Translations under genes and position numbers: made by a program
Part shown: positions 651 to 58,505 of the stretch, one piece after another
Layout: each line of letters starts with the position of its first letter
Position numbering within the stretch: position 1 is the stretch's first letter
Notes under the pieces: generated by a model
The model's database searches: none
Seen by the model: only the letters and a program-made list of their open reading frames with translations
What the model was told of the DNA's origin: nothing
Source of the DNA: Octopus sinensis
Taxonomy: Eukaryota
DNA length: 64,000 nucleotides
Reading direction: 5' to 3'
NCBI RefSeq assembly: GCF_006345805.1
Contig: NC_042997.1
Span: 90,954,001 to 91,018,000, forward strand

Positions 651-676
651 CTGAGGGGTATAGGCCGAAATAATGG

Positions 677-706
<30 letters not shown>

Positions 707-713
<7 letters not shown>

Positions 714-3850: not shown

Positions 3851-3912
<62 letters not shown>

Positions 3913-4329
3913 ATGTGTGTTTGTTTATATGTGTATGTAGGTGTGCATAAATGTATATACATATCATCATCATCATAATTGTCAGATTGTTTTGAATTAA
4001 TCATGCATTATCTCATGGCTTTGAAATTTTGATGATGTAATTGTATATTTTTAGACTGACACTATAAAATAGGCATGAGAATCCAGATCTGACTGGTTTG
4101 AACATAAAACAGGTAGAATATTTTGGCTGGAAATGACCAGTTTAAATGCTAAAGAGTTAATGTCAGTTGAATAGTTTGACAAGATTCAATGAGCCAGAGG
4201 ACAGTGTTGAACTAATGCTTGCTTTGGCATAGTTCCTATAGCTGGATGTCCTTTCTTATGCAAATCACTTAACAAAATGTATTGGATGTTTTTTTTCTGT
4301 GGCATCAAGTAACTCACTATACAAGAAGC

Positions 4330-5440
4330 CATTGACTGAAAGGGGGTGCTTTGTATTAAGTATGAATGAGACAGGAACAAGTGCCTTGTTGAGGAGATAT
4401 ACAGGTACCCCAGCAGAAAAAAAGGGGGAATGGTGGAGGTGGAGACGAGGTGTCGGGGTATACCTTCAAGGTACAAGGTGGATAAAGAAAGAATAAGGAA
4501 AATTGAGGATGGGTAGGTTTGTGAGTGAGTGAAAGGAGAGTGATAGAGAAATGGACAGGGTTGAATGGTGAACATAGGTGGAGGTATGGTCAATGATGAA
4601 TCTCAGTTTGCGGAAGGTGAAGAAAATAGGAGTGTATCAAAGAAGAGAGGAGTAATAGGAAGCAAAACATAAGTGAGGAAATGGAGAGCAACTGTATAAT
4701 AAAACCATAGATACATGAAAAATGGAGATGATATAAAGTATGTGTGTGAGGGGGAGAGAAAGAAAGAGAGAGAGAATATGCATAGCGATAGAGACAGGCA
4801 CACGGGGTGGATATAGTGAGTGACAAAAAAGTGTGGGATGGCAGATATGAGAGGGTGTTCATTGGAAAACAAAGAGGTATAGGATGATGTTAAGAGTGCA
4901 GGATGAGTGTAAAGGAAAGTGATTCCAAGAAGTATAAATGGTACCACAAAAGAGGAGATAGAATATGTGCCTTCCTGTTCACATATAATTACAGTAGCTG
5001 AGGAAATAGTGCTGTGATTAGGGAGGTGAAGGCTGGATGGGTGTTGCAAAAGTGAATTAATGATATGCTTAATGAGTTTTCTTGAGCACAGCAAGTTGCC
5101 AATTATCCCGGTCCTTTGTCATTTCCACAAGGTTCAACACAACCCGAAGTTGGTCATTACTGATTTGTCTCATGTCTTCCTGGGTCTCCCTCTTCCACAA
5201 GTTCCATCTACCTTTAGCGATCAGCATTTCTTTGTGAAGCTGTCCTCAACCACACACATCACATGATTATACTTGTACAATCTTCCCTTTTACACACTAC
5301 ATCTGATGCCACATATACCCAATTTTTCTCTCAGCATATTTGCAATTAGTTATATATGAACACTGACATTGCACATCCAGCAGAATATGCTAGCTTCATT
5401 TCTTTCTATCTAGCATTGCTGCTCGTGCATAAGCATCATA
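4330..5440 (-). mobile_element. Degraded RTE LINE 3' end plus pyrimidine-rich 3' tail
   Basis: 5060-5300 is the antisense of the GRGRPRKTW-type C-terminus also seen at 8526-8729. The adjacent purine-rich plus strand explains the low-complexity ORFs at 4186-5094. Confidence 0.6.
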
Positions 5441-5725
5441 CAATCTCTGGCATTCATTCTATAGGGAGAGACTTAAACAAACCAAGACTGGATGTCAAGT
5501 GGTGGTGGGGAAACTAAGCACAAAGACACCCTCACTCACACACATGTATATATACAATGCATTCATATAGTTATCATCTACCAAATTCATTGACAAGGCA
5601 TTGATTGACCTGGGGCTACAGTAGTAGACACTTTCCCAAAGTGCCATGCAGTGGGACTGAATCCAAAGCAATGAGATTTCAAAGTGAACTTTTTAACTAC
5701 ACTGCCATGTATGTATATACATAAA

Positions 5726-5788
<63 letters not shown>

Positions 5789-6230
5789 ACACACATACCA
5801 TACATATGTACATGTACACACAAATATGTAAGTATATATACACATACACGTGTGAGTGCATAAGTTTACATTATATGTTCTCCCATCAAAATGTTGAGCA
5901 TTAAATGGTGACTTTTATTAACATCTGTTAACAAACTGTCTGGTTGTTCCATGCTTTCAGAGGGAAGTAGGATTAAAAAAAAAACAATTTGAAAGACAGA
6001 TAAGAGTTAACAAAGAGAAGGGCATCTAGCTGTAAAAGAATGCCTCAATATGTATTCATCTAACTTACATAAGTATGAGAAAGAAAAAAATAATGAACAT
6101 AAAATTGAACAAATAATCATTTTGAAACAGTTATGAACAACCTGTGACCTACAAGATTCTTTGAATGGGCACACATTACTAGTTTCAGCCAGAGGGTTGT
6201 GGCCATGTTGGGGCACTGCCATTAGCTCTG

Positions 6231-6620
6231 CTACACTTTTACTACTTGAAACCTCATCTGATATGTGACATTTGGTGAATGAGGGAGTTTGATGTTGCTG
6301 CCCTCATCTGCATTTCTTGCTGCAAGGTAGGATTCATCTGGAACTCTTGACAGGGGGAGATTCAGTTTTGTTTTGAAGATGCCTACATCCACTCCATGTA
6401 GTTCACTCAGGCTTTTAAAGGGGATATTGAAGGCCCTTGGGATCCAAGCTATTGCAGTATCTAGTCCTGTATCTTGATGGCAATGTTGGGATTTTTGGTA
6501 CAATGCAGTAGCACCCCATTCTGCTATTTGTGTATGAAAAATTACCTTTAATTTTTTTTTTAGTAGTGTGGCCCAGCTTCAATTGAACTTATGTCTCATG
6601 CAACCCACTTCTCAAGAAAG
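6231..6620 (-). mobile_element. CR1-clade LINE 3' fragment
   Basis: ORF 6231-6503 contains PRAFNIPFKSL..LHGVDVGIFKTKLNLPLSRVPDE, resembling the CR1 C-terminal F(K)xxLDxFLxxVPDEP motif. Confidence 0.7.
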
Positions 6621-6732
6621 GTTGCCCAAGCCTGTTCTAAAAGCTTAAAAGAACAAAACAAAAGAAACGAAAAAAAAAACACTTGATTTTTTTTTTTTTT
6701 TGCAACTGAAACGAAAACTTTTGTTCATATTT

Positions 6733-6742
6733 TTTATTTATT
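6733..6742 (-). terminator. Candidate polyadenylation signals of TMEM248 (two overlapping AATAAA), implying a 3'UTR of about 1 kb
   Basis: Plus-strand tttatttatt at 6733-6742 reads as AATAAA twice on the minus strand. Another AATAAA lies at 6972-6977. No transcript data. Confidence 0.35.
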
Positions 6743-7720
6743 TTCTTGATTGATATTTTTCTTCCCCTTAATATAACAATTGTTTAATAATAATAACTTT
6801 GAAATTCAGGTCCAATATGTACAAATATAGAGAGAAAGAAACAGAAAATAGTCAGTCACAGGTGGCATCAGAAATAACCTCAACTGGACAACACCGGACA
6901 AAATGCTTGACAAACAGTGTTGTGGAGGAATTATAGGCTGTTGGGGGTCAGTGAATGGGTGGAGAAGACAGTTTATTAAAATAGGAAGAGAAAGAGAGGG
7001 CGAGAGAGAGGACAAAATAAGATAACAAATAAAAATAACAATGTTGGTAAAGAAATCAAGGAAAAGATGGAGTACAGGTAGGGAAAATCAAATTGGAAAG
7101 TTAATTTGTGTGTTTGTATGGAAGTGGGGAGTAGGTGAGCAGCTGAGGACAGGAAAGCTACAACCAAAAATATAATGGTCTGGTGTAAGTACAAACATAC
7201 TCTAGTGAACATGTCACACTATAGACAGTGCTTTACAGTCACATCAGGCTGGATGCAACATTATGTAGCAACAAAGATAGCAACAACAACAACAATAGTA
7301 GTAGTAGTAGTAGTAGAAGAAGAAGCAGTGATGGTGGTGGGTTGAGGAGAAGGGAAAGGAGAGAATTAAGAAGTTGCATTAATTATCCATGTCCTGCAAG
7401 AGAAATCTGGCTTTTACCATTTAAAACCACTGTTGCCATCAAACACCATCATTGGGTCCTTATCCGGTGATGATGACAACAACAACAACAGTGATGATGT
7501 TAAGAAGTCTCCTCATCAAACCTCAAGTATCCAACACACTACTATTGTCTTGCATGTTAAATCCTTTCCTAGTATTAAGTTCCATATTGCAGCAGGGACA
7601 AGTTCTGGTAATAAGTTGTCAAAGGAGCAAGGAAAGGGGGACGTGGGGAGGGGGAGGTGGAATGTGGAGATTGAAAGACTTGCTGAAGTTGTTCATCTAA
7701 TAGCTGCAAATCTGTGAATA

Positions 7721-7738
7721 TTAGGCTTTGAGAAATAC
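7721..7738 (-). CDS. TMEM248: TMEM248 terminal coding exon (VFLKA*); full protein 310 aa
   Basis: tatttcag|GTA TTT CTC AAA GCC TAA parallels the human EK|VALAEA* ending. Coding exons sum to 933 nt = 310 aa plus stop (human recalled as 314 aa). Confidence 0.8.
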   Translation of the reverse strand, partial: VFLKA

Positions 7739-8039
7739 CTGAAATAGATACAAGAAAGTGCATTAAATATTGAAACATTAAAAAAATAATTTAAGAAAAA
7801 ATATATATATAAGTTAACTATTTCTCCATAGACTGGAACAATGATGAACAGTCTTAATTCATTTTCAAACCTTATTCGATTCTCACCAAGTGTACACACT
7901 ATTTTTTTGGAATGGTGAAGCTAGAAGTGGATAAAGCTGGTAAGAATAAAGTTTCTAAAATGGATAGAAAAATCTAAAAGATTTCTTTGCTCAATAGTAG
8001 AACATGCGTCATTCTTAAAAATGTGGGTTCAGTTTCAAT

Positions 8040-12254: not shown

Positions 12255-12520
12255 CTATGCCCGTGTAGGTGACACATAAAGGGCACCCGTGTTATTGACG
12301 TGTATAGCGCACCCATGCCGCTGACGCGTAAAAGGGCACCCGTGCCACCGACACGTAAAGGGCACCTGTGCCAATGACGCATAAAGGACATCCGTGCTGG
12401 TGGCGTGTAAAGGGCACCCGTGCCGGTGACGTGTAAAGGGCACCTGTACTGGTGACGTGTAAAGGGCACCCGTGCCGGTGACACATAAAAGGCACTTGTG
12501 AGGTGACATGTAAAAGACAG
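12255..12520. repeat. Minisatellite of ~20-24-bp units (GTGCCGGTGACGTGTAAAGGGCACC-like) inside a SINE; related arrays at ~21190-21430 and ~45650-45770
   Basis: Contiguous degenerate tandem units with no unique spacers. Confidence 0.85.
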
Positions 12521-28966: not shown

Positions 28967-31447
28967 ATATCATTATTGATATCGTAATGATAGTTAAGAA
29001 GAAAAAATTAGGATTTGATTTTTAAAAATCTGTAATCTGTTGGCATCTTTTCTGATTCCTTTGCAGCCAGTACTTAGCTTGACAGTGAGAAAGTCACTGT
29101 TGACACAGTTTCTGTTTGATATTTAAGACAATAACTAAACAGCTTTAATATTTTCTTTTGTAAACTCTTCTGTCAATATTTTATATAATGAAATGCATTG
29201 CCCTAGACACAGGAATAGCTGTGCAAGTGCAGTTACATAGTGGAAACACTTGCTTCCTAACTATGTGGTTTTCAATTCAGCTTCACCGTACAGCACCTTG
29301 GGTCTTCTACTATAGACCCAGGCCAACCAAAGCTTTCTGAGTGGATTTGGTAGGCAGAAACTGAAAGAAACCATGTGTGAGTGCTTGTGTGCAGCTTTTG
29401 TGTTTATCCCTCACCACCACCACTGGTGTTGATTTGTTTTTGCCTCTGTAACCTGGTGGTTTGGCAAAAGAGACTAATAGAATAAGTACCCGGCTTGATT
29501 TTTTTTCAACTAAACCCTTCACAGCAATGCCTCAGCATAGTCAGAGTCCAATGATTGAAACAAGTAAAAAATTAAAAATAAAGACACATACACAAAGTTC
29601 AAATTTATAGAAAACAAAAGACGAAGACGGGTGAAGGCATAACAAGCAGATGTATTAGTTTTAATGCCTGGGAAGAATAGAAAAGTCTTTGATGTTTCAA
29701 GCCTGCACTCTTCAACCGGAAGGATTGAGAAAGGGGGGAAAAAAATGGAGAGAGAATGAAAAAAACAGAGAGAGAAAAAAAATGTGTAGGGATTAATGGT
29801 TCAGCAAGATGAAATGGGCCACAAACTCACAAAATGGATTTCTTTTAGTTTTCGTCTAAGAAATCCACTCACAAAGCTTAGGTTGGCTCAAGGCTATAGA
29901 AGACACTTGCACAAGGTACCACACAGTGGGACTCTGAACCTGAAAGCAAACTTCTTACCACACAGCCATGCCTGCATGTTCACAAATCTCGTAAAAGTTT
30001 TCAAGATTTAAGTTGGTATCATTAACAAAGTTAATATTGGTTTTAGCAACATAATAATTGGTTTTAATGGCATTATCACAGGTATTTTGGCATACAGTGA
30101 CAGGTGTCACAAAATAGCTCCACCCCAACTAGCTTGGTTTTTCTTGCAAAATCTGATGTATATAATCTTTAATTGTGTAGTGGCAATAGACATATTTCCT
30201 TGTGTGTTTATCTATTCCTTATCGGACTGAGAAGTTCTTCATTCAGCATAGTCTTGTTGTTTGTTTTGTTTTTTGTTTTTTGCTTTTTTTCTCCTCTCTA
30301 ATGCCTTCAGATCACAGTAACATTTACTTTAGTGACATTTCAGCAGTAAGTTAATGTAGCATTCCAAGGGAGTCAAAGGTAGGAGGAAATGAATCTTGTT
30401 TGGTACTTTAAGATGGGAAACTGAAACTATGAAGAAGTAACAAGATTGAAACTCAACAACAGCAAGCTGGTGCTGGCTCAAATATTTCTATCTACAACAA
30501 AATCGTAGATAAAAGTTTTTTGGAGAACTTCTTACAAACAAGTAGAATACAAATAGCAGGGCCACTGTGTACAACATACAGAAGCAAATCCACATGAAGT
30601 GCACATGTTAGTCCTGGATAAATGCTTCCTTCACTATCCTTAGACGATTTCATTCTATTTGAAAGGGAGGGAGGGGAGAGAGAGAGAGAGAGACCTGGAC
30701 CAATGCAGCTGATGAAAGCTAAGCTGTTAAAAGAAAGAATATCTAGACATAATGTATATCACATCTGACATGTGACTGCAACCACATTGCTTTTACACAT
30801 AGTATATAGCCCAATAATCTGTCACACTGCAATCACAGTTTACAGAAAACATTGCACAGGATCTATTATCACCATGTCTCAAGTTAGCATTTCCAGTCTG
30901 AATGGAAGAACTCTTTATAAAGAAACTAATTAACCAATAGATTTTTAAAAGATACACAGATTTGAGAGGGAAATCCACATAAGCACAGACATGGCTGTGT
31001 GGTAAGAAGCTTCCTTCCCAACATGGCATGGGTTTAGGCTCAATCCCACTGCATGGCACCTTGGCCAAGTGGCTTCTATTATAGCCCCAAGTGACCAAAG
31101 CCTCGTGTATGGATTTGGTTGAAAGAAACTCTAAGAAGCCTGCCATATGTGTGCATATATGCCTATATGTTTTTGTGCTTGTTCCCCACCACTACAAGAT
31201 AACCAGTGTTGGTTTGTTTATTCCCATAACTCAGAGGTTAAAAGAGACTAATAGAATAAGTAGCAGGCTTAAAAATAAATACTGGGGTGATTTGCATGAC
31301 TAAACCCTTCAAAGTGTTGTTTTGATGCTTCCCAACCACGCAGTTCCAGGTTCAGTCCCACTGCATAATACCATGGGTAAGTGTCTTCTTGTAACCTGAG
31401 GCTGGTCAAAGCCTTTTGAGTAAATTTGGTAGATGGAATCTGAAAGA

Positions 31448-33207: not shown

Positions 33208-33251
<44 letters not shown>

Positions 33252-33411
33252 GAAATTTACAAAAAAACAAATACGAAGACTAGTTTGATGCTCGGGAAAT
33301 GAAGAAAAGTCTTTTATGTTATGAGCCTATGCTCTTCAACAGAAAGGAATAGGAGAAAATAAACAGAGGGAGAATGAAAAAAAACTTGAGGATTTAGCGA
33401 TCAAGCATGGC

Positions 33412-33453
<42 letters not shown>

Positions 33454-33506
33454 ATTGGTGAATTGAAGAAATGGAGCTGAACGCAGATTGAACAGAAATC
33501 GTTTTA

Positions 33507-33595
33507 TTTCATTCTACACGTGTTTCGAAAGGCACAAATTACCAAAATCCGATTGAATAATGGGACCATATTGTGTCTTTCTCTTCAGGAAGAAA
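33507..33595 (-). ncRNA. Type I hammerhead ribozyme, identical inverted copy
   Basis: Exact reverse complement of 34889-34977. Confidence 0.8.
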
Positions 33596-34294
33596 AATCT
33601 CAGCTCCAGCCAGGGAGTACCCACTAGGGGTATAGTTATAAATAGGGGTGTTGTGGTTGACGGTAACAATGGGAGTAGGGTAGAGAGCCCCAATAGCAAC
33701 CCCAGCATCATTTCCCGCAATAGCAGCACCACGGGCACTAGCAATGACAGTACTCTGATAGATAGTGGAGAATCAGGGGTTATTCCTATAGTTAATAGTG
33801 ACGTAGTGGAAAATAGAGTAGTAAGCGGCTGCAGGTCTCGGAACGAATATAGTGACAGGAACGCAGTTCTAATTTCAGAAACTAATCCTAGCAGATTAAG
33901 ATTTACGTCGGCGAACTCCAAGATCAAAAACGCCGTCTACCAATGCAAGGTTTACACGGACTCAGATGTCTTCACTTATGTAGGGGCATCATCCTCAAGA
34001 TTGTCTTTGCGTGTCTCCAATCATTACGCAACTTTTCGGGACGTGAACAAGCGCCAGACCACGGGACTCAGTAAGCTAATATGGCGACTGAAGGATACGA
34101 ACTTAAGCTACAGGCTGGAATGGTCAATTTTGTCGGTGGCCCTCCCATTTGATAGGGGCAGAAGACAGTGCAACCTTTGTGTCTCCGAACTCTTCCATAT
34201 TTTGTTTGCCAGAGGCCGGATGGTAAACGGGCTCTTACAGTCGGCTTTTCGATGCCCCCATTGGCGGCGTTACACTTATCTGGCTTTTAAATAG
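33560..34294 (+). CDS. GIY-YIG endonuclease ORF of a Penelope-like element (244 aa, uninterrupted)
   Basis: AVYQCKV..TYVG (GIY-YIG), LRVSNH (conserved Arg/His), LSKLIWRLK...W, CNLCVSE (Glu), MVN (Asn) and C-terminal CPH. The N-terminal ~115 aa is low complexity, and the ATG lies within the inverted arm. Confidence 0.8.
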   Translation: MGPYCVFLFRKKNLSSSQGVPTRGIVINRGVVVDGNNGSRVESPNSNPSIISRNSSTTGTSNDSTLIDSGESGVIPIVNSDVVENRVVSGCRSRNEYSDRNAVLISETNPSRLRFTSANSKIKNAVYQCKVYTDSDVFTYVGASSSRLSLRVSNHYATFRDVNKRQTTGLSKLIWRLKDTNLSYRLEWSILSVALPFDRGRRQCNLCVSELFHILFARGRMVNGLLQSAFRCPHWRRYTYLAFK

Positions 34295-34888
34295 CGTTTA
34301 TAAATAATACCGGCACCCATAGCCCTTGGTAACAAATTCTGAAATAGCCTTTAAGATATCTACGATTATCCACTGCAAGGGGAATTACTCCTGTAAGACA
34401 AACGGGGCTTGGTTTTTTCACAGCGGGGGGTTTCCTTGACAAGGCAGGCTTAGATGAACACACACACACATAAAACATAATATATATATATTTTTTTCTT
34501 TCTGCCACCCAACGGTTATCACGGCAGTAGCCACTGACAGCCGAACGATCAAACGCACACACGTACACAAAAAATGTTTTCTACCCCTACGCCAACACAC
34601 ACATATATAGAACAGTATACACACACACACGTCTCTAAGTAGATTTTTTCTCGCCCCTTATAAAACATCCAATATTCCTTAAATAGTCAGAACTTTATTC
34701 TCGGTCACTAAGAACATCTATACGCCCTCACCCACATGATTGACCGATGCCTGACCTGTAGAATTCTTCAGCCACCGGTTCTCAGCATACACTGAAAAAC
34801 AGTTTCGCCATGGGCTCTTAGGAGCATGGTTCGATTTGGTTTTTGCTCCGCCTCTGTTCTGTTTTTGTTTCTCTAACGGATTTCCTTT

Positions 34889-34977
34889 TTTCTTCCTGAA
34901 GAGAAAGACACAATATGGTCCCATTATTCAATCGGATTTTGGTAATTTGTGCCTTTCGAAACACGTGTAGAATGAAA
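34889..34977 (+). ncRNA. Type I hammerhead ribozyme (PLE pseudo-LTR)
   Basis: Stem I UUUCUUC/GAAUGAAA with a 1-nt bulge. Core CUGAAGA at 34896-34902. Stem II GAAAGACACAA/UUGUGCCUUUC (10/11 pairs). GAAA at 34958-34961. Palindromic stem III ACACGUGU. Predicted cleavage after GUA at 34969. Confidence 0.8.
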
Positions 34978-35184
34978 TAAAACGATTTCTGTTCAATCTG
35001 CGTTCAGCTCCATTTCTTCAATTCACCAATAATGTTTTAATTTCAATTATCCGCACCAACGCACGGTTGCAACGCCAGATGGTTGTACCTCCAACCGTGC
35101 TGTTTACTGCTGTGATTTTTGCTACTAAGGTATCGGTTAACTTTTGATTAATCTACAACAAGATTATTCATCTTTCTATTTCAC

Positions 35185-35222
<38 letters not shown>

Positions 35223-38200
35223 AGAATATTGATTACAATAAATCAACAAGAGTTCACAATACACTTTATGTTGGCAAGCTGGGAAGTAGCAATAAAAGGC
35301 ATGTTCATTGCCTAAGTAGTAGGATTTGAAACCAAAGACGTTAAATTTAATAGGAAGAAGTTTTGATGGTGGTGGATTTTTCTATCAAGTATTCAACTAG
35401 AGACTGACAAGACACATCCACATAGGTCTCAGAGTAAGAGCTTACAGAGTTATTTCCCTTATTCAGTTACAATCATCTTGATCTAAATGGCTTGAGAAAA
35501 AGTACAGCAAAACAATTGGTTTGATGCACAGAACCTCGTTCCAAAACTGCAATAAAAAACAACAACACACACGCACACACGATCTAATCACAGACAAAAT
35601 ACATATTTATCTGCAACTGACCTGTGTTGATCCGCTAGTAATTTGATTTCTTTCACTTTCAGAAGTGACAAAATGATTCAAAACTAAATGAAAACTAACC
35701 AATAACTACGGAGTACTTCTTTTAATGGTTAAAAAAAAATTACATAACATATACAAGATAGGTAATAACTAAGGATAGTAACTTCAAGATTTGTTTCCAG
35801 CTGAAATGAGTTGCAGTTGAATTAGATGTTTATTTGAATTAGTACAACAGTTTTAACCCTTTCACAATCAATATTTCTAATGAAATACATGAACCGTTAG
35901 TATTTGAGAAGATTTAGTAAAATAACTTTTTCATAAAGCTGGTGCCACATAAAATTATGGAAGATATTAATTTTTATATGAAGATTTGGAAACAAGAAGT
36001 TTTCTATCCCAGAACCAGAGTCAGCCTACGGGGTTGAAGTCAAAAGGATTAACCCAATAGCATTCAGATTATTCTGTCAAATTTAATGCTTATTTATTCA
36101 CATCATCATCATCATCATCATTTAGCGTCCGCTTTCCATGCTAGCATGGGTTGGACGGTTCAACTGGGGTCTGGGAAGCCAGAAGGCTGCATCAGGCCCA
36201 GTCTGATCTGGCAGTGTTTCTATGGCTGGATGCCCTTCCTAACGCCAAACACATTATTTTGAATTTATCATGCATCATCTTACAGCTTTGAAATGTTCAT
36301 GATGTAATTGCTTATGTTTAGAAGGATATTGTAGGGTAGGTGTGAGAGGTTGCATCTCGCTGGTTTAAATGCTAAAGGGTTAATGGGTATTTTTGTTTTT
36401 TGTTTTTCAAAATTAGTATAGAGTGAACAGGTCTGCATTACAGTAAATCAGCATTCATCTTGATCCAGCATCATCTCATCCATGAGGTGCAATATCCTGA
36501 GATCTGTCCTTCACAGTACATTTTACCCAATTCTCATCATTCACAAGTTTGTAGGAAAGGGGCAATTGTACTTGAACTCAATACAAAGTGTGATGAAATG
36601 AAATACTGCAAGGCCTTTGGTCTGGTGCATTGCTTCTGTTACTCAGGTTAAATTACAAATTAAGAATTTTACTACTTTAGTATTTTGCAAATTCCAATAT
36701 CACTTGCAATAATGAAAAAAAAATTACTGAATTAAGAGTAAGCTACACTTAAAACTGAGAAAAAAATTTTATACATTTATAAGTCAAATATTCTAAAAGT
36801 ATGTTTAGGATTAAATCACATAAATTATAGTTCCCTGGAGTTAATGAAGATATTACAGAAATGTGGTCTAGTTGGTAGTGACATTAACACATATGATAAA
36901 AGCCACTGCTAGCCTCTACATCAGCATTTTCCAACCAGGTTTCTCCAGAACACTGGGATTCTATAAGAAATAGTGATATATAGGCTAATTATACACAAAT
37001 TAATTTTTGAGCCATTTTTGTGTTTAATTCTGTATACAAAACTTTATTGTACATGCATAGGATTTTCTGTAAGGTAGAGGGAGATTCTGACCTCAGTAGG
37101 TCATAAGGAGATCCTACATGAAAAATGATATCACAATAGGGAATTGTAGGGAAATTTAGTCTAAGTAAGATCTTGATCAAGACAAAATTTCGTAAATCTT
37201 CTTTGTGATATCCAATAGCTTTAGCATTGGCAAACCTTTCAAAGACAGTTTTATGCTTTATTTAATCACTTTATGAAAGAGAAAGAAAAAAGATTATAAA
37301 GATATTAAATAAGTTTTATGTAGGGGTTCCCTGAGACATGCAATGTATTTCAAGGGTTACTCAAGAAAAAAATCTGAGAAACATCACTTTACATACATGG
37401 ACATTCCACCAGTTAGAAATAGAAGCTTGATCTTCCTCAAATCACTTTATCATCTAAGTACACCTAAACCCCGAAAAAGGTTACAGCTGAAATGCTTTTG
37501 ATTATGTTAATTTGAGGATAAACAATAACAGATTTTTAATATTATTTATATAATAATGTTATATATAACAGTATTTAACAAGTGTTTCATTAAAATACCA
37601 TGCTGAGATGAAATCATTTCTTAAACCTAAAGCAAAAATTTTTTAGGATAAATAGCAGTTAAATTTTCTCAAGAAGAGTGGAAGCTAATTGTCATAAGCT
37701 TAACTGAGATCAACATTCATTATATCTGTCTTAAGAGAACCAAACTGAATAGATATTTAGAATATGTAGTATTTGATTCATACCAAACCTCTCCCTTAAA
37801 AGCTACATATGACTAGGTAATATGTCAGAATATTGAGTGGCATGTTGACAGTTGTGAACATCTTATCATTGGCATTGTGTAGTTTCTATAATCAAACTCA
37901 GGCAAACCCAGTCACCTATCAAGTAAATTGATGACAGAATTAAGGACAGCAGTAAATTTTCACCCTTTTTTTCTTTGCCTTTTTTCATGAAATATAAATG
38001 GGACAGCACCCAGTTTTCTTAATAATGAAATAAGGATTTCTTATATACAAAGCATATGAATTTACACTTTTCTCAAGGGTATTCATATAAGCAATCCAGA
38101 CATAGCTTTATGGTTACGAAGTTCACTTAGTAACTAATTGATTTTCTCAGTGCACAGTACTTGGGACAAGCGTTTCTTACTAGAGCCTTGTAAATGAAAT

Positions 38201-45442: not shown

Positions 45443-46899
45443 TACATTATGCTGATGCATTTATCAACTACCAGTGTCAAATCAGTTTCTTTTAAAATGC
45501 CATTGTTTGTGACAAACTGCTTGTCAACAACAACAACAACAATAAACTTTGACATGTAAGTTTCTTTATTGCCCACAATAAAGAAAGGTCACTGGCCACA
45601 AATCACATCCAAACATCTTAAGTCAAGCTAAATAAAATTGTAGTTGTGGCCAGTGTTGGTGACACGTGAAAGGCACCAGTGCCAGTGACACGCAAAAGAC
45701 ACCCACGCCGGCGACATGCAAAAGGTGCCGGCGACACGCAAAAGGTACTCATGCCGGCGACATGTAAAGAACACTCAGTACACTGAGAAGTGGTTGGTGT
45801 TAAGAAGGGCATCCAGCCATAGAAACCAAGCCAAGACAGACTGGAACCTGATGCAACTCTCTGCTCCAGTCAAACTGTCTTACCCATGCCAGCATGGAAA
45901 ACAGATGCTAGATGATGATGATAAAATTGTTGAAATTTATGAGTTTAAAGTTCATAGATTATTCAATATTTGAGTGATGTATGAATTGTTAAATTTTTTA
46001 GTCACTAAATTACAAAACAATGTTATATGCATTTTTGAGCCAGACATATATTGTCTCAATGTAGCTAAATATAGAAAAATAAATGTAAATCTTAGTATAC
46101 AACACTGAGATTATGTGATTGCTTAAAATGGGCTGCTAGCCAAATGAGAACAAAGGCCAAGCTTAACATCATGAAGAGCAATGTTTAGAAAGCTTGAGGC
46201 CAGTTTGTGCATCCATATAAGAATTCAGATCAGTTGTGGGCAAACTATGGTCTACAGGACTTACTGAGTAGCATGCCTTAACAAAAATTACCTTGAATTT
46301 TGTTTTAGTAGTGTGGCTCATCTGATGATGAGCCATATTTCATGCAGCCTGTGTCTTGAAAAACGATTGTCAATGCCTAATTTAGATAGATGATTTACTG
46401 GTCAGGAAATTTTAACAATAGTCTATTGTTAAAATCGGTAGAGGGATTCAACATAATAATAAATATATACAAATACAAAACAAGGATTTTAACAGAGTTT
46501 GAAATCATGACTTTGTGATCCTTAGTCCAGTACATATATCCACAATCTAGATATTTTTTTTTCTAATCAAGGCGCAAGGCCCTAAATTTTGGGGGAGTGG
46601 GCCAGTCGATTAGGTTGACCCCAGTATGCAACTGGTACTTATTTAATTGACCCCGAAAGGCGAAGTCAACCTTGGCAGAATTTGAACTCAGAAAGTAAAG
46701 ACAGAAAAGTACCATTTAGCATTTTGCCCAGCATGCTAATGTTTCTGCCAGCTCACCACCATCCACAATCTAGATATTGAAAACGACTGCTGGACACATG
46801 TTCCATTAATTTCCAGTGGGTGTTCACACTTGGAGAAGGAGTAACTTCATGTTTGTTTGTTTAGCCTCAGTTCAGCCTTGACTGAGCAGACCTATGATC

Positions 46900-52590: not shown

Positions 52591-52640
<50 letters not shown>

Positions 52641-52672
52641 CAACTTGTACCTGGTTTTAGTATTTCAGGTCG

Positions 52673-53008
52673 CCTCCTTATGAGAGCTCAAAATCTCTCG
52701 TGGAAGCGCCATCCAACCAAAATGCAAATATATGGGAAACTACCACCTGTGTCATCTCTTGTGAAAGGTAGGAGAGTCCAGTTTGCTGGACATTGTTGTA
52801 GAGCTGAAAAAGAAGTAATTTCTACTCTTCTCCTCTGGAAGCCATCTACTCGCAATACCAGAGGACGCATACTCTCCTACCCTGATGTAATCTCCAGGGA
52901 TACAGGCATCCAGCAACAGGACCTCCGTAATGCTATGATGGACCGTGAGGTCTGGTGTAACATAGTAAATTCCATTGTCTCGACCACGGTCGAACAATGA
53001 TGATGATG
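52673..53008 (+). mobile_element. 5'-truncated RTE-like LINE with a (GAT)n tail and TSD
   Basis: Peptide RRVQFAGHCCR...YPDVISRD..MMDREVW. 11-bp TSD ATTTCAGGTCG at 52662-52672 and 53009-53019. Confidence 0.85.
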
Positions 53009-53439
53009 ATTTCAGGTCGAATGTAATGAATTCGCAGAATTGTTAAAGCACTGCATAAAATACCTTACAATATATGCCGTTATGAATTTTTACTTTACTT
53101 TTCATTCTGCCCAGTTCAATTTAACTTATTACTCCCATGCAACTTATACCTTGTGCCTATGCTCGAAACAAATAGTATTATTTTGGCAGAATCGTTAGAG
53201 CGTCGGAGAAGCGGGGTGTCTTGCGGTATTTGTTCTGGCTCATTACATTCTGAGTTCAAATCATACCAAGGTCAACTTTGCCTGTCATTTCACCGGGATC
53301 GATAAAATTAAAATACATATCCAAGTAATGGGGTCGAAGGTATCGACTAACTCCTCCCTTCAAAAGTTACAGAAACCATTAATATTATTACTTAAAATTT
53401 CTGAAGCCAATTGATGTTTAATATAAAATGATCGAAGCA

Positions 53440-54050
53440 AAACAACGTAAACCGAGTTAGTTTAATACCCACAAAGACAGATGCAGGACATATTATATAT
53501 ATACTCCAAGTGCGAACAGTAAAACAATCGAAAGGAAAATTAAAGATTTCTCTAGATCAGGTTAGTTTCAATTTTATAAAAAGGAAATCGAATGTTGTAA
53601 TAGACAAATCTTTATCCAGGCGCATCTGTTAACGTTTAAATAACAATATCAATATTTTCTGCTGCAACTTAAGGTTAGATAAAATATTCTGTAATTGCTG
53701 TTTTAAAACACAATATCGACTGTCAGGAAACAAACAGCAGGCAAAAATAAAAGTAAACAGTATGATAACTGTGGTAGCAGGGACCTAAAGAATATGTCCA
53801 GCGGACAAATGTGACGTGTTGGTAAGACAGGACATAATCATCAATGACGTAGTGAAGAGATGTTAAATATAATCGTGATAGTAAAGGGACAATGTCGTCA
53901 CAACGTCGCAGAAGCGAGACATGGTGTTATGACAAGTCTAATTGTTACGTAGATAAATAAAACACGAGAAAACGTAATAGCCGGTATTGCTTTCAATCTA
54001 TTTGATAACAGTAAATAAATAAAACACTAAGCAACTCTATCCTCTCGTAT
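53440..54050. promoter_or_regulatory. Candidate promoter region: CpG-preserved, with clustered CRE-like motifs
   Basis: TGACGT at 53812 and 53845, CGTCA at 53896 and TTACGT at 53945, at the edge of the CpG-depleted domain. No transcript evidence. Confidence 0.3.
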
Positions 54051-57000
54051 CAGTAAAAAAAAAAAAAAATTTAAACTGCCAATTTCAGTTTGCTGTATTC
54101 CACGAAATACTACAGTTAAGATTGGTACCTATCCCCTTATTCTATAGCATCAACCTAAACAAGACACTAGTAAATAGCAGGTAACATTCTACTTCGTATG
54201 TGAATTCAACATAAGTTTAACCGTCTTATACAAATATAATTACACCGACACTTGAAGAGGTGATCCATGTTATAAAAATAAATAATTTTATTACAAACAA
54301 CCAATAACAATTATCGTGCATCTAAAACCTGGGTTTGGATGGATCTGTTAATTAATAGTGGGTAGTTTATCGGACAAGACCACTCCGTACAGGAAGATGT
54401 ACTTATGCATCAGACAAGCGATGTATGGATGGAACTCTTTAAAAGGTACGCGAAAGGTTACTTCTAAATTAATTAGGAAATTTTTCTATCACTGTGAATT
54501 TTACATACCAATGTATTTTAAACACCTTTTAACTCATTTAATATTATTATAATCTTGAAATAGAAAAGTACTTAACAGATGTTAAATCTGAAAATTAAAA
54601 AAAAAAAAACGAAAGAGAGCGAGAGAGAAAACTCGACATATAAATAAAACTTTCAAATTGTTTATAAAGCTTTCACTTTTAAAAAATTGATCTATCCTTT
54701 ATGCAATATAAAAGGCAGATTCATTTAACTTTTATTGTGGAAAATTCAAATTCCTTGATCTAAAACTATACTCCCGGATCTACACATTACAACAAAAAAT
54801 TTTGCTGGTTGTAAGAAAATGTTTGAACTGTATTTGTATCTTGTAGTATTAGTTCACAGTGAAGTGTAACAGTTTATCAGGCGATAGCATCAAATTAGAT
54901 CATTAGTTTTCATTTTTAGACTGTAGCTCTTGTTTTACATGCAGCAAAGAAGGGCCTAAAAAGTCACGGTCCTCTATCTTGTACACTCAGGTTTGACACA
55001 TATGCCCATCATATGAATGTAGCTACTCCTTTCCAGCTCAGAGTTGAGCGAGTGGTTGGCAACATTATGCACATTAGGTTATAAAAACCCGGACATAATT
55101 TAGATGGTGATCATGCATATCCAGGTAGCAAATCATGGTAAGTGGATATACAGAACCAGACATTTTAGAATATGACGGAGTTAAGGACCGAATGCGAAAT
55201 TTTATTTTCGGCCATGCTGATTACAAATGAGCACAAATAATTTTTCAATTTTATCATTTTTATTAACATAAAAACTACTGATTACGATTAAGGATTTACA
55301 ACTGCTTTCTAGACAATGGCATTTAGGGAACTAGTCGAACACAGCTTCGAATTAGGAGCAGGTTTGCAGTAGGGAAACTATGTATCACCTGCCTTTGATG
55401 CTGTCATGACATTTCAATCGGCCCGTTAAATGATAATTTTGAAAATTTCAGACAAAAGTAAAATTCCAAAACAAACAATAGGTGCAGGCAGAGCGGTGTA
55501 GTTAAAAATCACACAATTTCGGGTTCAGTCTCATTAGGCGGCACCGTGGGCAAGTGTCCTTGCAGTGGGTTTGGTACACGGAAACTGTGTATCTCTTTGT
55601 CCATTTCATACCGCTTTACAATAGGTGTTGGTTTGTTTACACCCTCGAAACGTAGCGGTTCAGCAAAAGAGACGCACAGAATAAGTACCCAACTTTAAAA
55701 ATAAGTATTGGAGTCAATTTATTTGACTAAAAACCCTTTAAAGCAGTGCTCCTGCATGGCCGCAAACCAATGACTGAAACAAGTGAAAGAAAGAATATTT
55801 GCTACAAGACTAGTGAGCAGACAGCTTTTGGAGTAAGCATAACACTTTCATTTTGCGTTACTCTTAAAAGCCTTTGCCAATTCGACTGTCCAAAAGTCGG
55901 TACGTCTACCGCAATTCGACATTTCTTTCGTGATACATGCATTCATTATTATATTATGTGAACATTCATTAGTTTGCCATCAGCAGTTTAACTGATACAT
56001 ACTTTTCAGAGTTACCTCCCGTCGTTTTTTAATTTTTTTTATTATAAATTCGAATTAGAACCTTCAATACAACCATAGGATCAAACGAAGGGATTTATGA
56101 GGTCATTGAACCTTTAGATATGGTCTTCATATCACATCCTACTGTTTAAAAAAAAAGTCACTCGTATTGACTGGGATGCCGTTGATAACAAGCCTATTTA
56201 ATCAGATCGACTGGGGGGGGGACGACAACACAAACATACAATGCTGAAAATCTTGGGTTTAAATATTGAATAACGAAAGAAGTCTAGCTCTACTTACATT
56301 AGTCTTTAAATTATCAGTTTAAAGTCGAGATTGAATGACTGTATACATCAGGTAAGCGTAATCAAGCGGAGTTTCTGAATAAACAACCGCCCCCATTCGT
56401 AACTTTCCCCCATAATTATATCTGCCTTAATTGAATAGGGAGATCGAAGAGAAATATGAAAAATCATTTGAATTTGGGTATGTCGTTATTCACATTATTA
56501 TCGCACTCTTGTAGCACCAAGTGCAAGAGCAGTGCAACGACAAAACACTCAAATTTATAAAGCCATACATAAATGGATCACTTTCGAAGGTGTGTGGATG
56601 GATACACACACGGGTGTTGCTAAGTAAATAACAATTATATTATCCCACTTAAGTAAATTATTAAAGCTCTAAACTTATGTCTCAAGCACAGACATCAGAC
56701 GTGAAATGTGGAGGGAAAGAATTAATCAATAACCAATCCATCCCAGTACCCCCACCGGTACTTTATTTCATCGACAGCCGAAATGAAAAGCAAATTTTGC
56801 TCCGTGTAAATTATTTAACCTATAAACGAGAATATAACATCATTGAACATTATCTCATAACTTAAATCGTTTATAAATTAGTCGGTATCAAAGACAGGTG
56901 CAGACAACTTCATAGCCTCAACTATGAATGAATGTACGGCAACTTTCATGGATTTGCTTTCTGATATTTTAACAAAACAATAAGATACAGGCAAAATAAT

Positions 57001-57459
57001 GATGTTTTAATATAAAACAAGTGGAGTACATATACACACGTTATGTAACAATTCGGTCTCAATGTTGATTCTTTTTCTGTACTTTTCAACCTTTAACATC
57101 GTTGAAAGGTGCTTTATTTCATAGAGAATTTCCTAATGTTCATAACTGATTTACCGTTACAGACCATTTTTTCTATCTCCGTGAAAACCAGAAAGAAAAC
57201 TACTTACTACGTTAAGCAAATGACAACTCAATCGAAACAGTTAAACATCTTGACATTCTAATAATTTTTGTGGCTAAGATTTTGAGGTATCAAAAAAAAA
57301 TTTAAATAATGTTCATATATTCAAACGTAAGGAGTTAATCAGATGAATGTTAAAGTAAGATGTAAAATAAAAGGAGAGATACAGGCAGAAAGAGAGAGAA
57401 ACAGAATAGAAACCTAATGTCAATATATGAAATTGCACTTACTTGTTTGCTAAGTCTCA

Positions 57460-57700
57460 CGTGTTAATGTAACTTATCCTTGTCCCCATGACAGATACAG
57501 CTTGAAGATGTCAATTAGCGCGTTGCTTATTACAAATGGGTCCCGTTTATAGATGCACTGTACTACCTAATGATTTCAACATGCAGCTATGGTTACAAAC
57601 AACATCGGACTCGATATAACGAGAAAGTTGTGTCAAAAGAGCGGACGCCATTACAATCGACATCAACTCTCGCGTGAAGCTATACCTATCATGTGATATA
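57460..57700 (+). pseudogene. Degraded innexin-like fragment
   Basis: Across frameshifts: NVTY / LVPMTDT / RVAYYKWVPFIDALYYL / LW / NNIGLDITRKL / GRHYNRH, collinear with the innexin CW..NTY.P...YYQWVP..ALLFY.P..W...SG.D region. Confidence 0.5.
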
Positions 57701-58505
57701 TACGAGACTAAGGGCCGACTACAAAATAACGTGCAAAGTGGATAGAATCTCCAAAAGACTCCAAATATTTCATGTAAGTATGTGTTGCCAAAGTTTCACC
57801 ATACTTTAATAGAGGTATTGGCAACCTTTTTTTCGTGAAGAGGTCCGCACTACTAAGCAAAAATTCAAGGTAATTTTTCGTTGGCGTGCCATTCAGAAAG
57901 TTCTACAAGCTGTAGTTTGTTCGTAAAATACCTTAATATAACACGGACACAGTTTTATGTTAAGTGGTGATTTATTATTATTATTTTTGTTAATGTTTTG
58001 AAATGTATCCTAGCATATTTTCCTTTTTAAGGATATATGATAATGTTACGAATTATACTAGAATAAATATTGCACTGTAGAGTTAATATTAAAGGTACTT
58101 TAACTGAAATTGTATTAACATTTCCTGAATGAGAAAATATTGACGTTATTAAATGTTGAAAACTCCTCTTAACCTTTTTGCGAACTAAAGAAATATCAGA
58201 CCTGGTTCTCAAATGGATGACTTGGAAAACCCAGGTGCTGTAAGCATCTAATGGGTTTGTGTATCTGTGAAGCTAAGTTATACGAGTTGCGTTTTTATTT
58301 CCCCCAAAGGATGCTAGTTCTCTTCTAATGCCATCTGAAATAAGAATGAGCGTTACTACTAAACTTTCCCATGTTCCATAAATCTAAAGCTTAGTTTCTC
58401 TAACTTAATTTCACTTTCTCTTTGGAACATTCACTGCAAAGCAAATACTTAAAGCATATGCATTACTGTTTCCCCCCACCCCCTTTTTTTTTAAATTCAC
58501 GTATA

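What the first reader, a model, noticed from the sequence alone, without database searches (positions are those of the whole stretch)
33445..35190. Very young hammerhead-armed GIY-YIG element inserted in (TA)n: a compact endonuclease-plus-ribozyme module with no RT
Seen: an uninterrupted GIY-YIG ORF with the expected Tyr, Arg, His, Glu and Asn positions plus CxxC/CxH. It lies between two 100% identical 153-bp inverted arms, each containing a full hammerhead. The unit sits between (TA)n tracts and keeps its CpGs in a CpG-poor neighbourhood. Established: PLEs encode GIY-YIG endonucleases, carry hammerheads in their pseudo-LTRs and often have an inverted pLTR at truncated 5' ends. Inference: this is a recent insertion of a microsatellite-targeting PLE lineage, either a 5'-truncated copy or a dedicated EN-only non-autonomous family mobilised in trans.
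Basis: partly seen in the sequence, partly recalled or inferred. Interest (0 to 1): 0.85.

Follow-up and report, generated by a model that had tools for sequence, protein, structure and literature searches.

The report
Truncated octopus Penelope-like retrotransposon copy
This is a recent, 5'-truncated insertion of a known kind of retrotransposon (a Hydra-clade Penelope-like element) into a (TA)n microsatellite of what is probably an octopus genome; it has the inverted arm, hammerhead ribozymes and one-sided tail typical of that group and is not a new endonuclease-only element.

Summary
There are two 153-nt inverted arms at 100% identity. A 244-aa open frame ends in a GIY-YIG-type domain with every expected residue. 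The element lies in (TA)n at both ends. Its CpG observed/expected ratio is 0.87, against 0.19 in the flanks. Rfam finds no hammerhead and Pfam no GIY-YIG in the ORF. An explicit hammerhead descriptor hits only the two arms, and homologous copies in Octopus sinensis keep the structure through six compensatory pairs. The protein family is large. Its long members, including a 600-aa open frame in Argonauta hians, carry this domain at the C-terminus of a reverse transcriptase. The features match the published Hydra clade of Penelope-like elements. The window ORF aligns without gaps to the last 204 residues of an O. sinensis RT-EN frame, and its ATG lies inside the inverted arm. The copy is therefore 5'-truncated; nothing points to a dedicated EN-only module. 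The layout (inverted arm, truncated body, direct arm, tail, all within (TA)n) recurs twice in Argonauta. It fits published in vitro evidence for priming on both target strands from two internal start sites. One small new point: this octopus lineage has lost the CxCX5C linker cysteines yet still sits in (TA)n.

The parts
33415..33446 (.). Left half of the (TA)n target microsatellite, (TA)16
   Evidence: Tandem Repeats Finder. The flanks joined give one uninterrupted TA tract apart from a single extra T at the join.
33445..33597 (-). Inverted arm: reverse-complement copy of element positions 34887-35039, flush with the left (TA)n. The outermost TA is shared with the tract.
   Evidence: 153 nt, 100% complementary.
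33509..33594 (-). Hammerhead ribozyme motif in the inverted arm (mirror of 34890-34975)
   Evidence: Descriptor hit on the minus strand; sequence identical to the right-arm motif.
33560..34294 (+). 244-aa open reading frame. Codons 1-13 come from the antisense of the arm, so the ATG is fortuitous; the rest is element-derived.
   Evidence: Residues 41-244 are 57% identical, without gaps, to L001 frame residues 174-377 (E 2e-86). Residues 14-40 have no demonstrable homolog.
33598..35039 (+). Direct, 5'-truncated body of the element: end of the Asn/Ser-rich linker, EN domain, 3' untranslated region and direct arm
   Evidence: tblastn with RT-EN relatives matches only the EN part in the window, whereas RT segments lie upstream in L001 and L007/L008.
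33857..33922 (+). Pre-EN linker segment (aa 100-121, NAVLISETNPSRLRFTSANSKI). It occupies the place of the CxCX5C zinc-finger-like linker of other Hydra-clade elements but has no cysteines.
   Evidence: Alignments A1 and A2. R112, F115, S117, S120 and K121 are invariant among the five octopus-lineage sequences.
33923..34291 (+). GIY-YIG-type endonuclease domain of the Hydra-clade kind: Y127, Y140-x-G142, R151, H155, C204xxC207, E210, N223, C232xH234, and no CCHH between GIY and YIG
   Evidence: The description matches PMC8557442 section 11.
34295..34886 (+). 3' untranslated region between the stop codon and the direct arm. It contains CA-rich stretches and is poorly conserved against the O. 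sinensis relative.
   Evidence: The stop-to-hammerhead spacing (about 600 nt) is like that in L001, in L010 and in the L013 minus-strand copy.
34887..35039 (+). Direct arm, the pLTR-like 3' block that is duplicated in inverted orientation at the 5' end
   Evidence: 75-77% identical to L001 7410-7698 together with the tail.
34890..34975 (+). Type I hammerhead. Helix I 34890-34895/34970-34975. Core CUGAAGA 34896-34902. Helix II 34903-34913/34947-34957, enclosing a 33-nt insert. GAAA 34958-34961. Helix III is 2 bp with the palindromic loop ACGU. Predicted cleavage is after GUA, between 34969 and 34970.
   Evidence: The architecture matches metazoan PLE hammerheads (PMC4209133).
35040..35189 (+). 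One-sided 150-nt tail between the direct arm and the right (TA)n. It is absent from the inverted arm.
   Evidence: Conserved in L001 with long invariant blocks. A one-sided tail is a PLE signature (PMC8557442; PMC11167929). The same layout occurs twice in Argonauta L013.
35191..35220 (.). Right half of the (TA)n target microsatellite, (TA)15

Best explanation
The 1,743-bp unit (33447-35189) is a single, recent insertion of a Penelope-like retrotransposon of the Hydra clade into a (TA)n microsatellite. The host genome is most likely an octopod.

It consists of two cDNA copies of the same element RNA joined head to head:
- a very short inverted copy (153 nt, ending at a proximal 3' site);
- a longer direct copy (1,592 nt). 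This one is 5'-truncated inside the Asn/Ser-rich linker that separates the reverse transcriptase from the C-terminal GIY-YIG endonuclease, and it ends at a distal 3' site 150 nt further on (the tail).

Proposed mechanism, inferred by analogy with the anole Poseidon element studied in vitro:
1. The element's endonuclease, made by an autonomous copy elsewhere, nicks both strands of the (TA)n target.
2. Each 3' end primes reverse transcription on element RNA, one at the distal start site and the other at the proximal start site.
3. Both cDNAs stop short of the RNA 5' end and are joined. This gives perfect inverted arms, a truncated body and a tail at one end only.

The hammerhead in each arm is the normal 3'/pLTR ribozyme of the element. 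It has a 2-bp helix III with a palindromic loop, so it is of the type thought to cleave only as a dimer in multimeric transcripts.

The 244-aa ORF is the C-terminal remnant of the RT-EN polyprotein frame. It happens to be fused in frame to an ATG in the antisense of the arm. There is no sign that it is a functional unit of its own.

Shown here: the anatomy, the homology, the hammerhead covariation, the (TA)n association, the youth of the copy, and the recurrence of the layout in relatives. Inferred: the order of nicking and priming, and mobilisation by proteins supplied in trans.
For: Anatomy.

Youth: arms 100% identical over 153 nt including 5 CpGs each, an intact frame, and CpG o/e 0.87 against 0.19 in the flanks.

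Protein family: 2,440 representative clusters at E<=1e-3. Long members carry the domain at the C-terminus after RT-like motifs (DKT, YRDD) and a CxCX5C linker.

Match to the published Hydra-clade description (PMC8557442 section 11): no CCHH, CxxC and CxH flanking E and N, hammerheads, length under 3 kb, (TA)n targets.

Truncation:
- The window holds only the EN part, while L001 and L007/L008 hold colinear RT segments upstream.
- The L001 377-aa frame includes the RT-EN connector.
- Gap-free alignment of window aa 41-244 to L001 aa 174-377.
- Argonauta L013 has a 600-aa open RT-EN frame.

Hammerhead.

Architecture recurs in Argonauta L013:
- (TA)n, 197-nt inverted arm at 100%, RT-EN body, direct arm, about 155-nt tail, (TA)n.
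- (TA)n, 146-nt arm with hammerhead, 36 nt, 146-nt arm with hammerhead, 405-nt tail, (TA)n.

(TA)n association: tracts of at least 6 units cover 0.6% of the window. Even so, both junctions of the window copy, of the L001 copy and of the two arm-bearing Argonauta L013 units lie in (TA)n. So do the 3' end of the L010 plus-strand copy and the 3' side of the L010 minus-strand copy.

Constraint: dN/dS 0.12 between the window and L001. The non-coding arm plus tail is 75-77% identical, against 58-68% for the coding DNA.

Mechanism: the anole PLE protein cleaves and extends both strands. Reverse transcription starts at two internal sites, and the stretch between them is the genomic tail (PMC11167929). 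Inverted 5'-truncated copies and one-sided tails are stated PLE features (PMC8557442).
Against: - No second copy from the window's own genome could be examined. The RT-bearing relatives are other families or species: 57% amino-acid identity to the O. sinensis copy and about 35% to Argonauta.
- The L001 RT part is itself degraded and 5'-truncated. No intact full-length autonomous element of the cysteine-less octopus lineage was found (one search found nothing).
- The 82 nt between the arm junction and ORF residue 41 have no demonstrable homolog, so the exact truncation point is not proven.
- The tail is 150 nt here (155 and 405 nt in Argonauta), against 30-40 nt in published PLEs.
- The dual-strand priming model comes from a Penelope/Poseidon-clade element in vitro, not from a Hydra-clade element.
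- Curated models (Rfam, Pfam) do not recognise either the ribozyme or the nuclease in the window sequence itself.
Confidence: 0.85

Rival explanations
1. A dedicated, non-autonomous EN-only family. The unit (arm, EN ORF, arm, tail) would be the full-length form of an element that encodes only the endonuclease and borrows a reverse transcriptase from autonomous PLEs.
For: The ORF is intact, has a start codon and keeps every catalytic residue. No RT sequence occurs anywhere in the 64-kb window. The first 27 element-derived codons have no demonstrable homolog in the RT-EN frame of the relative. No full-length element of this lineage was recovered.
Against: The start codon and first 13 codons are the antisense of the hammerhead arm, and the same peptide opens the mirror ORF in the other arm. 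The rest of the ORF is colinear and gap-free with the C-terminal 204 residues of a longer RT-EN frame. An intact frame is expected anyway in an insertion this young. Relatives with the same arm/tail layout differ in where the body starts: inside the RT in Argonauta, and almost no body in the 146-nt pair. That is the signature of random 5' truncation, not of a fixed family structure.
Confidence: 0.07
2. A class II (cut-and-paste) transposon with 153-bp terminal inverted repeats and a TA target-site duplication, carrying a GIY-YIG nuclease as cargo or as its transposase.
For: Perfect inverted repeats and TA at both outer junctions.
Against: The right repeat is not terminal: 150 nt of conserved element sequence lie between it and the (TA)n. 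The homologous O. sinensis copy has no left arm at all. The arms carry a strand-specific ribozyme conserved by covariation. The nuclease is homologous to the C-terminal domain of RT-bearing proteins. No transposase-like ORF is present.
Confidence: 0.02
3. The inverted left arm is an assembly artefact (a chimeric or fold-back join), and the real locus is a plain 5'-truncated insertion.
For: The arms are 100% identical. The PLE literature itself warns that such structures cause assembly problems (PMC8557442).
Against: The same arrangement is a documented PLE feature. It recurs twice in an independent assembly of another octopod, once with 99% rather than 100% identity, i.e. with a real substitution. 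The arm ends precisely at the (TA)n.
Confidence: 0.05

Closest known systems
Hydra clade of Penelope-like elements (Craig, Yushenova, Rodriguez, Arkhipova 2021, PMC8557442)
   Same: The GIY-YIG EN lacks the CCHH cysteines between GIY and YIG. CxxC and CxH flank the catalytic E and N. The EN sits C-terminal to the RT in relatives. There is a hammerhead in the 3' repeat. Insertion is into (TA)n. The element is short. Aquatic invertebrate hosts include molluscs. An inverted 5' copy and a one-sided tail are present, as in PLEs generally.
   Different: This copy has no RT because it is 5'-truncated. In the window copy and its Octopus and Logan relatives the CxCX5C linker has lost all its cysteines, although the Argonauta relative keeps them. 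Helix II of the hammerhead carries a 33-nt insert, so Rfam models miss it. The tail is 150 nt rather than 30-40.
Poseidon element of Anolis carolinensis (PAc), the only PLE reconstituted in vitro (Frangieh et al. 2024, PMC11167929)
   Same: It supplies the mechanism that fits the anatomy: nicking and extension of both target strands, two internal start sites for reverse transcription, and a tail equal to the stretch between them.
   Different: It belongs to a different PLE clade (Penelope/Poseidon, with a CCHH-type EN). Its tail is short, its hammerhead overlaps the ORF start, and microsatellite targeting is not described in that paper (the word does not occur in its text).
Metazoan PLE hammerheads (Cervera and de la Pena 2014, PMC4209133)
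   Same: A type I motif in the flanking repeats. Helix III is 1-2 bp capped by a small palindromic loop, which implies activity as a dimer. Helix II is longer than usual. The G10.1-C11.1 pair is present.
   Different: Helix II is much longer (11 bp plus a 33-nt insert, 55 nt between the core halves). Cleavage was not tested.
Animal retrozymes (non-autonomous hammerhead elements derived from PLE pLTRs; PMC7229834, bioRxiv 10.64898/2026.07.22.740005)
   Same: PLE-derived hammerhead repeats mobilised in trans.
   Different: Retrozymes are non-coding direct tandem repeats that give circular RNAs. Here the two hammerheads are on opposite strands and flank a coding remnant.
5' inversions of human L1 by twin priming (from my own knowledge; not checked in the paper library)
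   Same: A second priming event on the other target strand yields an inverted 5' segment joined to a truncated direct 3' segment.
   Different: In L1 the inverted and direct segments are normally adjacent, non-overlapping parts of the RNA. Here the inverted segment duplicates part of the 3' region, as is usual for PLEs.

Membership tests
Penelope-like elements, Hydra clade | EN lacks the CCHH motif (no two cysteines between GIY and YIG) | tested here: met
   Only one Cys (C129) lies between Y127 and Y140. Relatives are the same. Criterion from PMC8557442 section 11.
Penelope-like elements, Hydra clade | [quoted passage not shown] | tested here: met
   C204xxC207, E210, N223, C232xH234, R151 and H155 are all near-invariant columns of a 54-sequence alignment and are all present in the window ORF.
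Penelope-like elements, Hydra clade | EN is the C-terminal domain of a single ORF that also encodes the reverse transcriptase (DKT motif, divergent RT4) | tested here: inconclusive
   The window copy has no RT. Homologous frames in relatives continue into an RT: L001 connector and thumb, P0031 with DKT and YRDD, and the Argonauta 600-aa open frame with motifs A-C. Pfam RVT_1 does not hit these RTs. No copy from the window's own genome was available.
Penelope-like elements, Hydra clade | Linker with a CxCX5C zinc-finger-like motif upstream of the EN | tested here: not met
   The window ORF, P0001 and P0002 (O. sinensis), and P0003 and P0004 (Logan contigs) have a conserved cysteine-free segment in its place. 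The motif is present in Argonauta P0027, P0031, P0012 and most other relatives. I treat this as a lineage variant and not as grounds for exclusion.
Penelope-like elements, Hydra clade | Hammerhead ribozyme in the 3' / pseudo-LTR region | tested here: met
   Descriptor hit in both arms only, 0.045 expected by chance. Six compensatory pairs and an invariant core across the window, L001 and L010/L011. Rfam covariance models do not detect it.
Penelope-like elements, Hydra clade | Insertion into (TA)n | tested here: met
   Both junctions of the window copy lie in (TA)n. So do both junctions of L001 and of the two arm-bearing units in L013. The 3' ends of the two L010 copies also reach (TA)n. (TA)n covers 0.6% of the window.
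Penelope-like elements (general) | Inverted 5'-truncated copy at the 5' end and an extension (tail) at one end only | tested here: met
   153-nt inverted arm and 150-nt one-sided tail. Feature as described in PMC8557442 and PMC11167929.
GIY-YIG nuclease superfamily (Pfam PF01541) | Significant match to the curated family model, or a GIY-YIG fold | tested here: inconclusive
   The window ORF gives no Pfam hit even at E<=10. 14 of 54 relatives hit PF01541 (best E 8.3e-5). A profile search of PDB sequences found nothing. The AF2 model (pLDDT 90) has GIY-YIG nucleases among its top Foldseek hits, but only at E 0.13-1.6 and TM 0.36-0.56.
Rfam hammerhead families (Rfam release 15, all 4,227 models scanned) | Score at or above the gathering threshold of a hammerhead covariance model | tested here: not met
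   No hit at gathering threshold in the window and none at E<=10 in 33300-35300. The likely reason is the 55-nt helix II region and the 2-bp helix III.
Class II TIR transposons with a TA target-site duplication | Inverted repeats at both termini and a transposase | tested here: not met
   The right repeat lies 150 nt inside the element end. There is no transposase ORF. The homolog L001 has no left repeat.
Animal retrozymes | Non-coding direct tandem repeats, each with a hammerhead on the same strand | tested here: not met
   The two hammerheads are on opposite strands and enclose a coding remnant.

The most novel reading that the evidence does not exclude
The octopus sub-lineage to which this copy belongs has replaced all four cysteines of the CxCX5C linker with a conserved cysteine-free segment. 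It is still found inside (TA)n at every end examined. If so, the zinc-finger-like linker that Craig et al. 2021 proposed as the determinant of microsatellite targeting is not required for it. The specificity would then reside elsewhere: in the EN core with its CxxC/CxH pair, in the cysteine-free segment, or in microhomology between the (TA)n 3' end and UA-rich start sites on the RNA. A still less likely reading is that the arm-supplied ATG lets this truncated copy express a free (TA)n-nicking endonuclease.
Probability: 0.3. Interest if true: 0.45.

Novelty: new member of a known kind. Interest (0 to 1): 0.25.

Why it matters
On its own this is routine repeat annotation: one more truncated PLE copy in a cephalopod genome.

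Three things give it modest value.
- Curated RNA and protein models (Rfam, Pfam) miss both hallmark parts of Hydra-clade PLEs. Such copies get mis-annotated as host genes. NCBI names the O. sinensis relative a "probable serine/threonine-protein kinase dyrk1".
- The very young head-to-head copies with one-sided tails, here and in Argonauta, are clean genomic footprints of the dual-strand, two-start-site reverse transcription seen so far only in vitro for an anole element. They extend that signature to another PLE clade, with much longer tails.
- The cysteine-less linker lineage gives a natural test of what directs PLEs to (TA)n.

Tried and rejected
Searches that found nothing:
- Rfam at gathering threshold and at E<=10: no hammerhead.
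- Pfam, NCBIfam and PDB sequence search with the ORF: nothing meaningful.
- PDB profile search with a 54-sequence alignment: nothing.
- Word-seeded homolog search with the ORF: nothing. With a five-sequence alignment it returned only four close relatives. With the RT-thumb fragment of L001 it returned nothing. No intact full-length element of the cysteine-less lineage was therefore recovered.
- Pfam on the RT-bearing relatives: no RVT_1 hit. Their RT nature rests on motifs and on the published description.
- Supplementary files of Craig et al. 2021 are not held, so no direct comparison with their Hydra consensus sequences was possible.

Analyses of limited value:
- Minimum-free-energy folding of the window hammerhead alone is not better than shuffles (z -0.53), although the L001 homolog is (z -3.87). 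Thermodynamics alone would not have supported the motif.
- BLASTP of ORF residues 14-40 against the L001 linker is not significant.
- The tail's consensus fold has only 2 compensatory pairs from 2 sequences, too few to claim a structure.

Readings considered and rejected: a TIR DNA transposon, a retrozyme, and a host gene.
Full report
OBSERVATION

- Two arms, 33445-33597 and 34887-35039, are 153 nt long and 100% complementary.
- An ORF of 244 aa runs from 33560 to 34294 on the + strand. It is the longest ORF in all 64 kb.
- (TA)16 lies at 33415-33446 and (TA)15 at 35191-35220. The flanks joined give essentially one TA tract.
- CpG observed/expected is 0.87 in the element, against 0.19 in each 10-kb flank and 0.31 for the window.

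- The ORF is not strictly between the arms. Its ATG and first 13 codons are inside the left arm, and the mirror ORF on the minus strand of the right arm opens with the same peptide.
- The right arm is not terminal. A 150-nt stretch (35040-35189) separates it from the (TA)n.

THE HAMMERHEAD

Rfam gives nothing, either at gathering thresholds over the window or at E<=10 over 33300-35300.

Read by hand, the + strand of the right arm has:
- helix I, 6 bp with one mismatch;
- the core CUGAAGA;
- an 11-bp helix II that opens with the G10.1-C11.1 pair and encloses a 33-nt insert;
- GAAA;
- a 2-bp helix III with the palindromic loop ACGU;
- the cleavage triplet GUA.

A descriptor written for this finds only the two arms in both strands of the window. 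Two hundred dinucleotide shuffles give 0.045 hits on average.

Independent support comes from homologous 3' regions in Octopus sinensis (L001, L010/L011). The core is invariant. 91.9% of cells pair, against at most 53% when partners are slid. Six pairs change on both sides. The helix III palindrome changes from CACGUG to CAUAUG in L001.

This is the architecture described for metazoan PLE hammerheads: a short helix III with a palindromic loop, a long helix II, and presumed action as dimers (PMC4209133). Folding energy alone is unremarkable for the window copy (z -0.53). Cleavage is untested.

THE PROTEIN

Pfam, NCBIfam and PDB sequence searches do not recognise the ORF, and a word-seeded search found no homolog. 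An exhaustive HMMER search found 2,440 representative clusters at E<=1e-3.

Most are short ORFs. The long ones (P0031, P0027, P0037, P0047) carry the same domain at the C-terminus. It is preceded by RT-like motifs (DKT...YRDD...), a conserved connector (IWYNPPY...) and a CxCX5C motif.

The near-invariant columns are Y, YxG, R, H, CxxC, E, N and CxH, and the window ORF has them all.

Evidence that the domain is GIY-YIG is consistent but weak:
- 14 of 54 members hit PF01541 (best E 8.3e-5), and no other family recurs.
- A pLDDT-90 model has T4 EndoII, Hpy188I and I-TevI among its best PDB matches, at E 0.13-1.6.

WHICH FAMILY

Craig et al. 2021 (PMC8557442 section 11) define the Hydra clade of PLEs by:
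- a C-terminal EN without the CCHH motif;
- a CxCX5C linker;
- possible CxxC and CxH motifs flanking E and N;
- a DKT motif in place of DKG;
- canonical hammerheads;
- a length under 3 kb;
- insertion into (TA)n;
- hosts in Cnidaria, Mollusca, Echinodermata, Arthropoda and Hemichordata.

The window element meets all of these that a truncated copy can show, except the linker cysteines.

The closest relatives are from O. sinensis (P0001 and P0002). An RT-bearing relative is from Argonauta hians (P0027). The window is therefore most likely from an octopod. That is an inference; the source was not identified.

TRUNCATED COPY OR EN-ONLY FAMILY

tblastn with RT-EN relatives matches only the EN part in the window. 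In L001 it finds colinear RT-thumb and connector segments upstream, and in L007/L008 it finds RT motif segments.

L001 has a 377-aa frame with connector, Asn/Ser-rich linker and EN. A thumb fragment precedes it in another frame. Window residues 41-244 align without a gap to residues 174-377 of that frame (57% identity, E 2e-86).

In Argonauta, one open 600-aa frame runs through RT motifs A-C, thumb, connector, linker and EN.

Together with the arm-derived ATG, this makes the window ORF the C-terminal remnant of an RT-EN polyprotein frame.

Caveats:
- The relatives are other families or species.
- L001 is itself degraded.
- The 82 nt between the arm junction and residue 41 have no demonstrable homolog.
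- No intact autonomous element of this sub-lineage was found.

THE LAYOUT AND HOW IT AROSE

The tail is part of the element. Arm plus tail is 75-77% identical to L001 7410-7698. That is more conserved than the coding DNA (58-68%), whose dN/dS is 0.12 with saturated dS. The 3' block is therefore constrained in cis.

L010 ends in (TA)n close to the position of the window's arm end, without a tail. Two alternative 3' ends therefore exist.

The full layout recurs twice in Argonauta L013.
- (TA)n, a 197-nt inverted arm 100% identical to the 3' region, an RT-EN body, the direct arm, about 155 nt of tail, (TA)n.
- (TA)n, a 146-nt arm with a hammerhead, 36 nt, a 146-nt arm with a hammerhead, 405 nt of tail, (TA)n, with arms 99% complementary.

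PLE papers describe inverted 5'-truncated copies and a tail at one end only (PMC8557442). Frangieh et al. 2024 (PMC11167929) showed in vitro that an anole PLE protein nicks and extends both target strands. They also showed that reverse transcription starts at two internal RNA sites, and that the tail is the stretch between them.

The window element is what that predicts:
- one cDNA from the distal site (35189 back to 33598);
- one from the proximal site on the other strand (the equivalent of 35039 back to 34887);
- the two joined head to head.

In the Argonauta RT-EN copy the proximal site is an internal TATATAT. This suggests, as an inference, that the (TA)n 3' end can prime there by microhomology.

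The hammerhead's role in transposition is unknown. In the anole system it was dispensable in vitro.

AGE

There are no differences in 2 x 153 nt that include five CpGs per arm, in a genome with strong CpG depletion. The frame is intact and the CpGs are retained. The insertion is recent. An absolute date would need a mutation rate I do not have.

RIVALS

- An EN-only family is not excluded but has nothing in its favour beyond the absence of an RT in this copy.
- A TIR DNA transposon is contradicted by the internal position of the right arm, the armless homolog, the strand-specific ribozyme and the RT-linked homologs.
- An assembly artefact for the left arm cannot be tested here. It is made less likely by the recurrence of the layout in another assembly, once with a substitution between the arms.

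NOVELTY

This is a new member of a known kind. PLEs are already catalogued as putatively active in Octopus vulgaris (PMC13282606).

The one feature that departs from the published clade description is the loss of all linker cysteines in the octopus sub-lineage, while the (TA)n association is kept. That bears on the proposal that the linker directs microsatellite targeting.

Noticed in passing
window 678-1288: A 256-bp unit occurs twice at 100% identity (714-969 and 1011-1266). Each copy is bounded by (TA)n (678-706, 970-1003, 1267-1288). It has no hammerhead core and no ORF. It may be another (TA)n-associated non-autonomous element inserted twice, or a very recent tandem duplication.
   Followed up: partly
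window 33211-33446: A 166-bp segment (33249-33414) lies between two (TA)n tracts immediately left of the element. Part of it is 72% similar to 29660-29765. The local TA tract may have been hit by insertions more than once.
   Followed up: partly
window 53000-58000: A block with CpG observed/expected close to 1.0-1.15 in a window averaging 0.31. Just upstream, the ORF at 52593-53000 (135 aa) looks, from my own reading, like the C-terminal end of a LINE ORF2. This may be another young repeat or a CpG island.
   Followed up: no
window 12260-12514 and 45661-45777: GC-rich, CpG-containing 26-bp tandem repeats with a related unit (CCCGTGCCGGTGACGCGTAAAGGGCA and GCCGGCGACACGCAAAAGG...) occur at two distant places. 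They are probably the internal array of a dispersed repeat family.
   Followed up: no
L001 6001-7316 (Octopus sinensis CM016860.1): NCBI names the gene model over this PLE remnant "probable serine/threonine-protein kinase dyrk1". The name presumably comes from the Asn-rich linker, and it looks like a mis-annotation of a transposon fragment.
   Followed up: partly
window 34887-35189 versus L001 7410-7698: The non-coding arm plus tail is more conserved between the two families (75-77%) than the coding DNA (58-68%). It has long invariant blocks such as TGTGATTTTTGCTAC and CAACCGTGCT, and a possible stem CACGG...CCGTG. This suggests a cis-acting RNA element for the reverse transcriptase.
   Followed up: partly
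window 33600-33608 and 35003-35011 (mirror 33473-33481): The first bases of the direct body just inside the arm junction (TCAGCTCCA) repeat a 9-mer that also occurs in the arm. This could be chance, or a trace of template switching at the head-to-head joint.
   Followed up: no
L013 (Argonauta hians BAAFZT010000061.1) 600-7800: At least four Hydra-clade PLE pieces from different families lie within 7 kb around (TA)n-rich DNA. They include a minus-strand EN ORF (3815-3432) with a hammerhead about 585 nt past its stop. The arm of the RT-EN copy (7393-7589) shows no hammerhead core.
   Followed up: partly
L010/L011 (Octopus sinensis): Two records, an unplaced scaffold and a chromosome, carry the same 10.8-kb region at 99.8% identity. 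They are probably haplotigs or an assembly duplicate.
   Followed up: no
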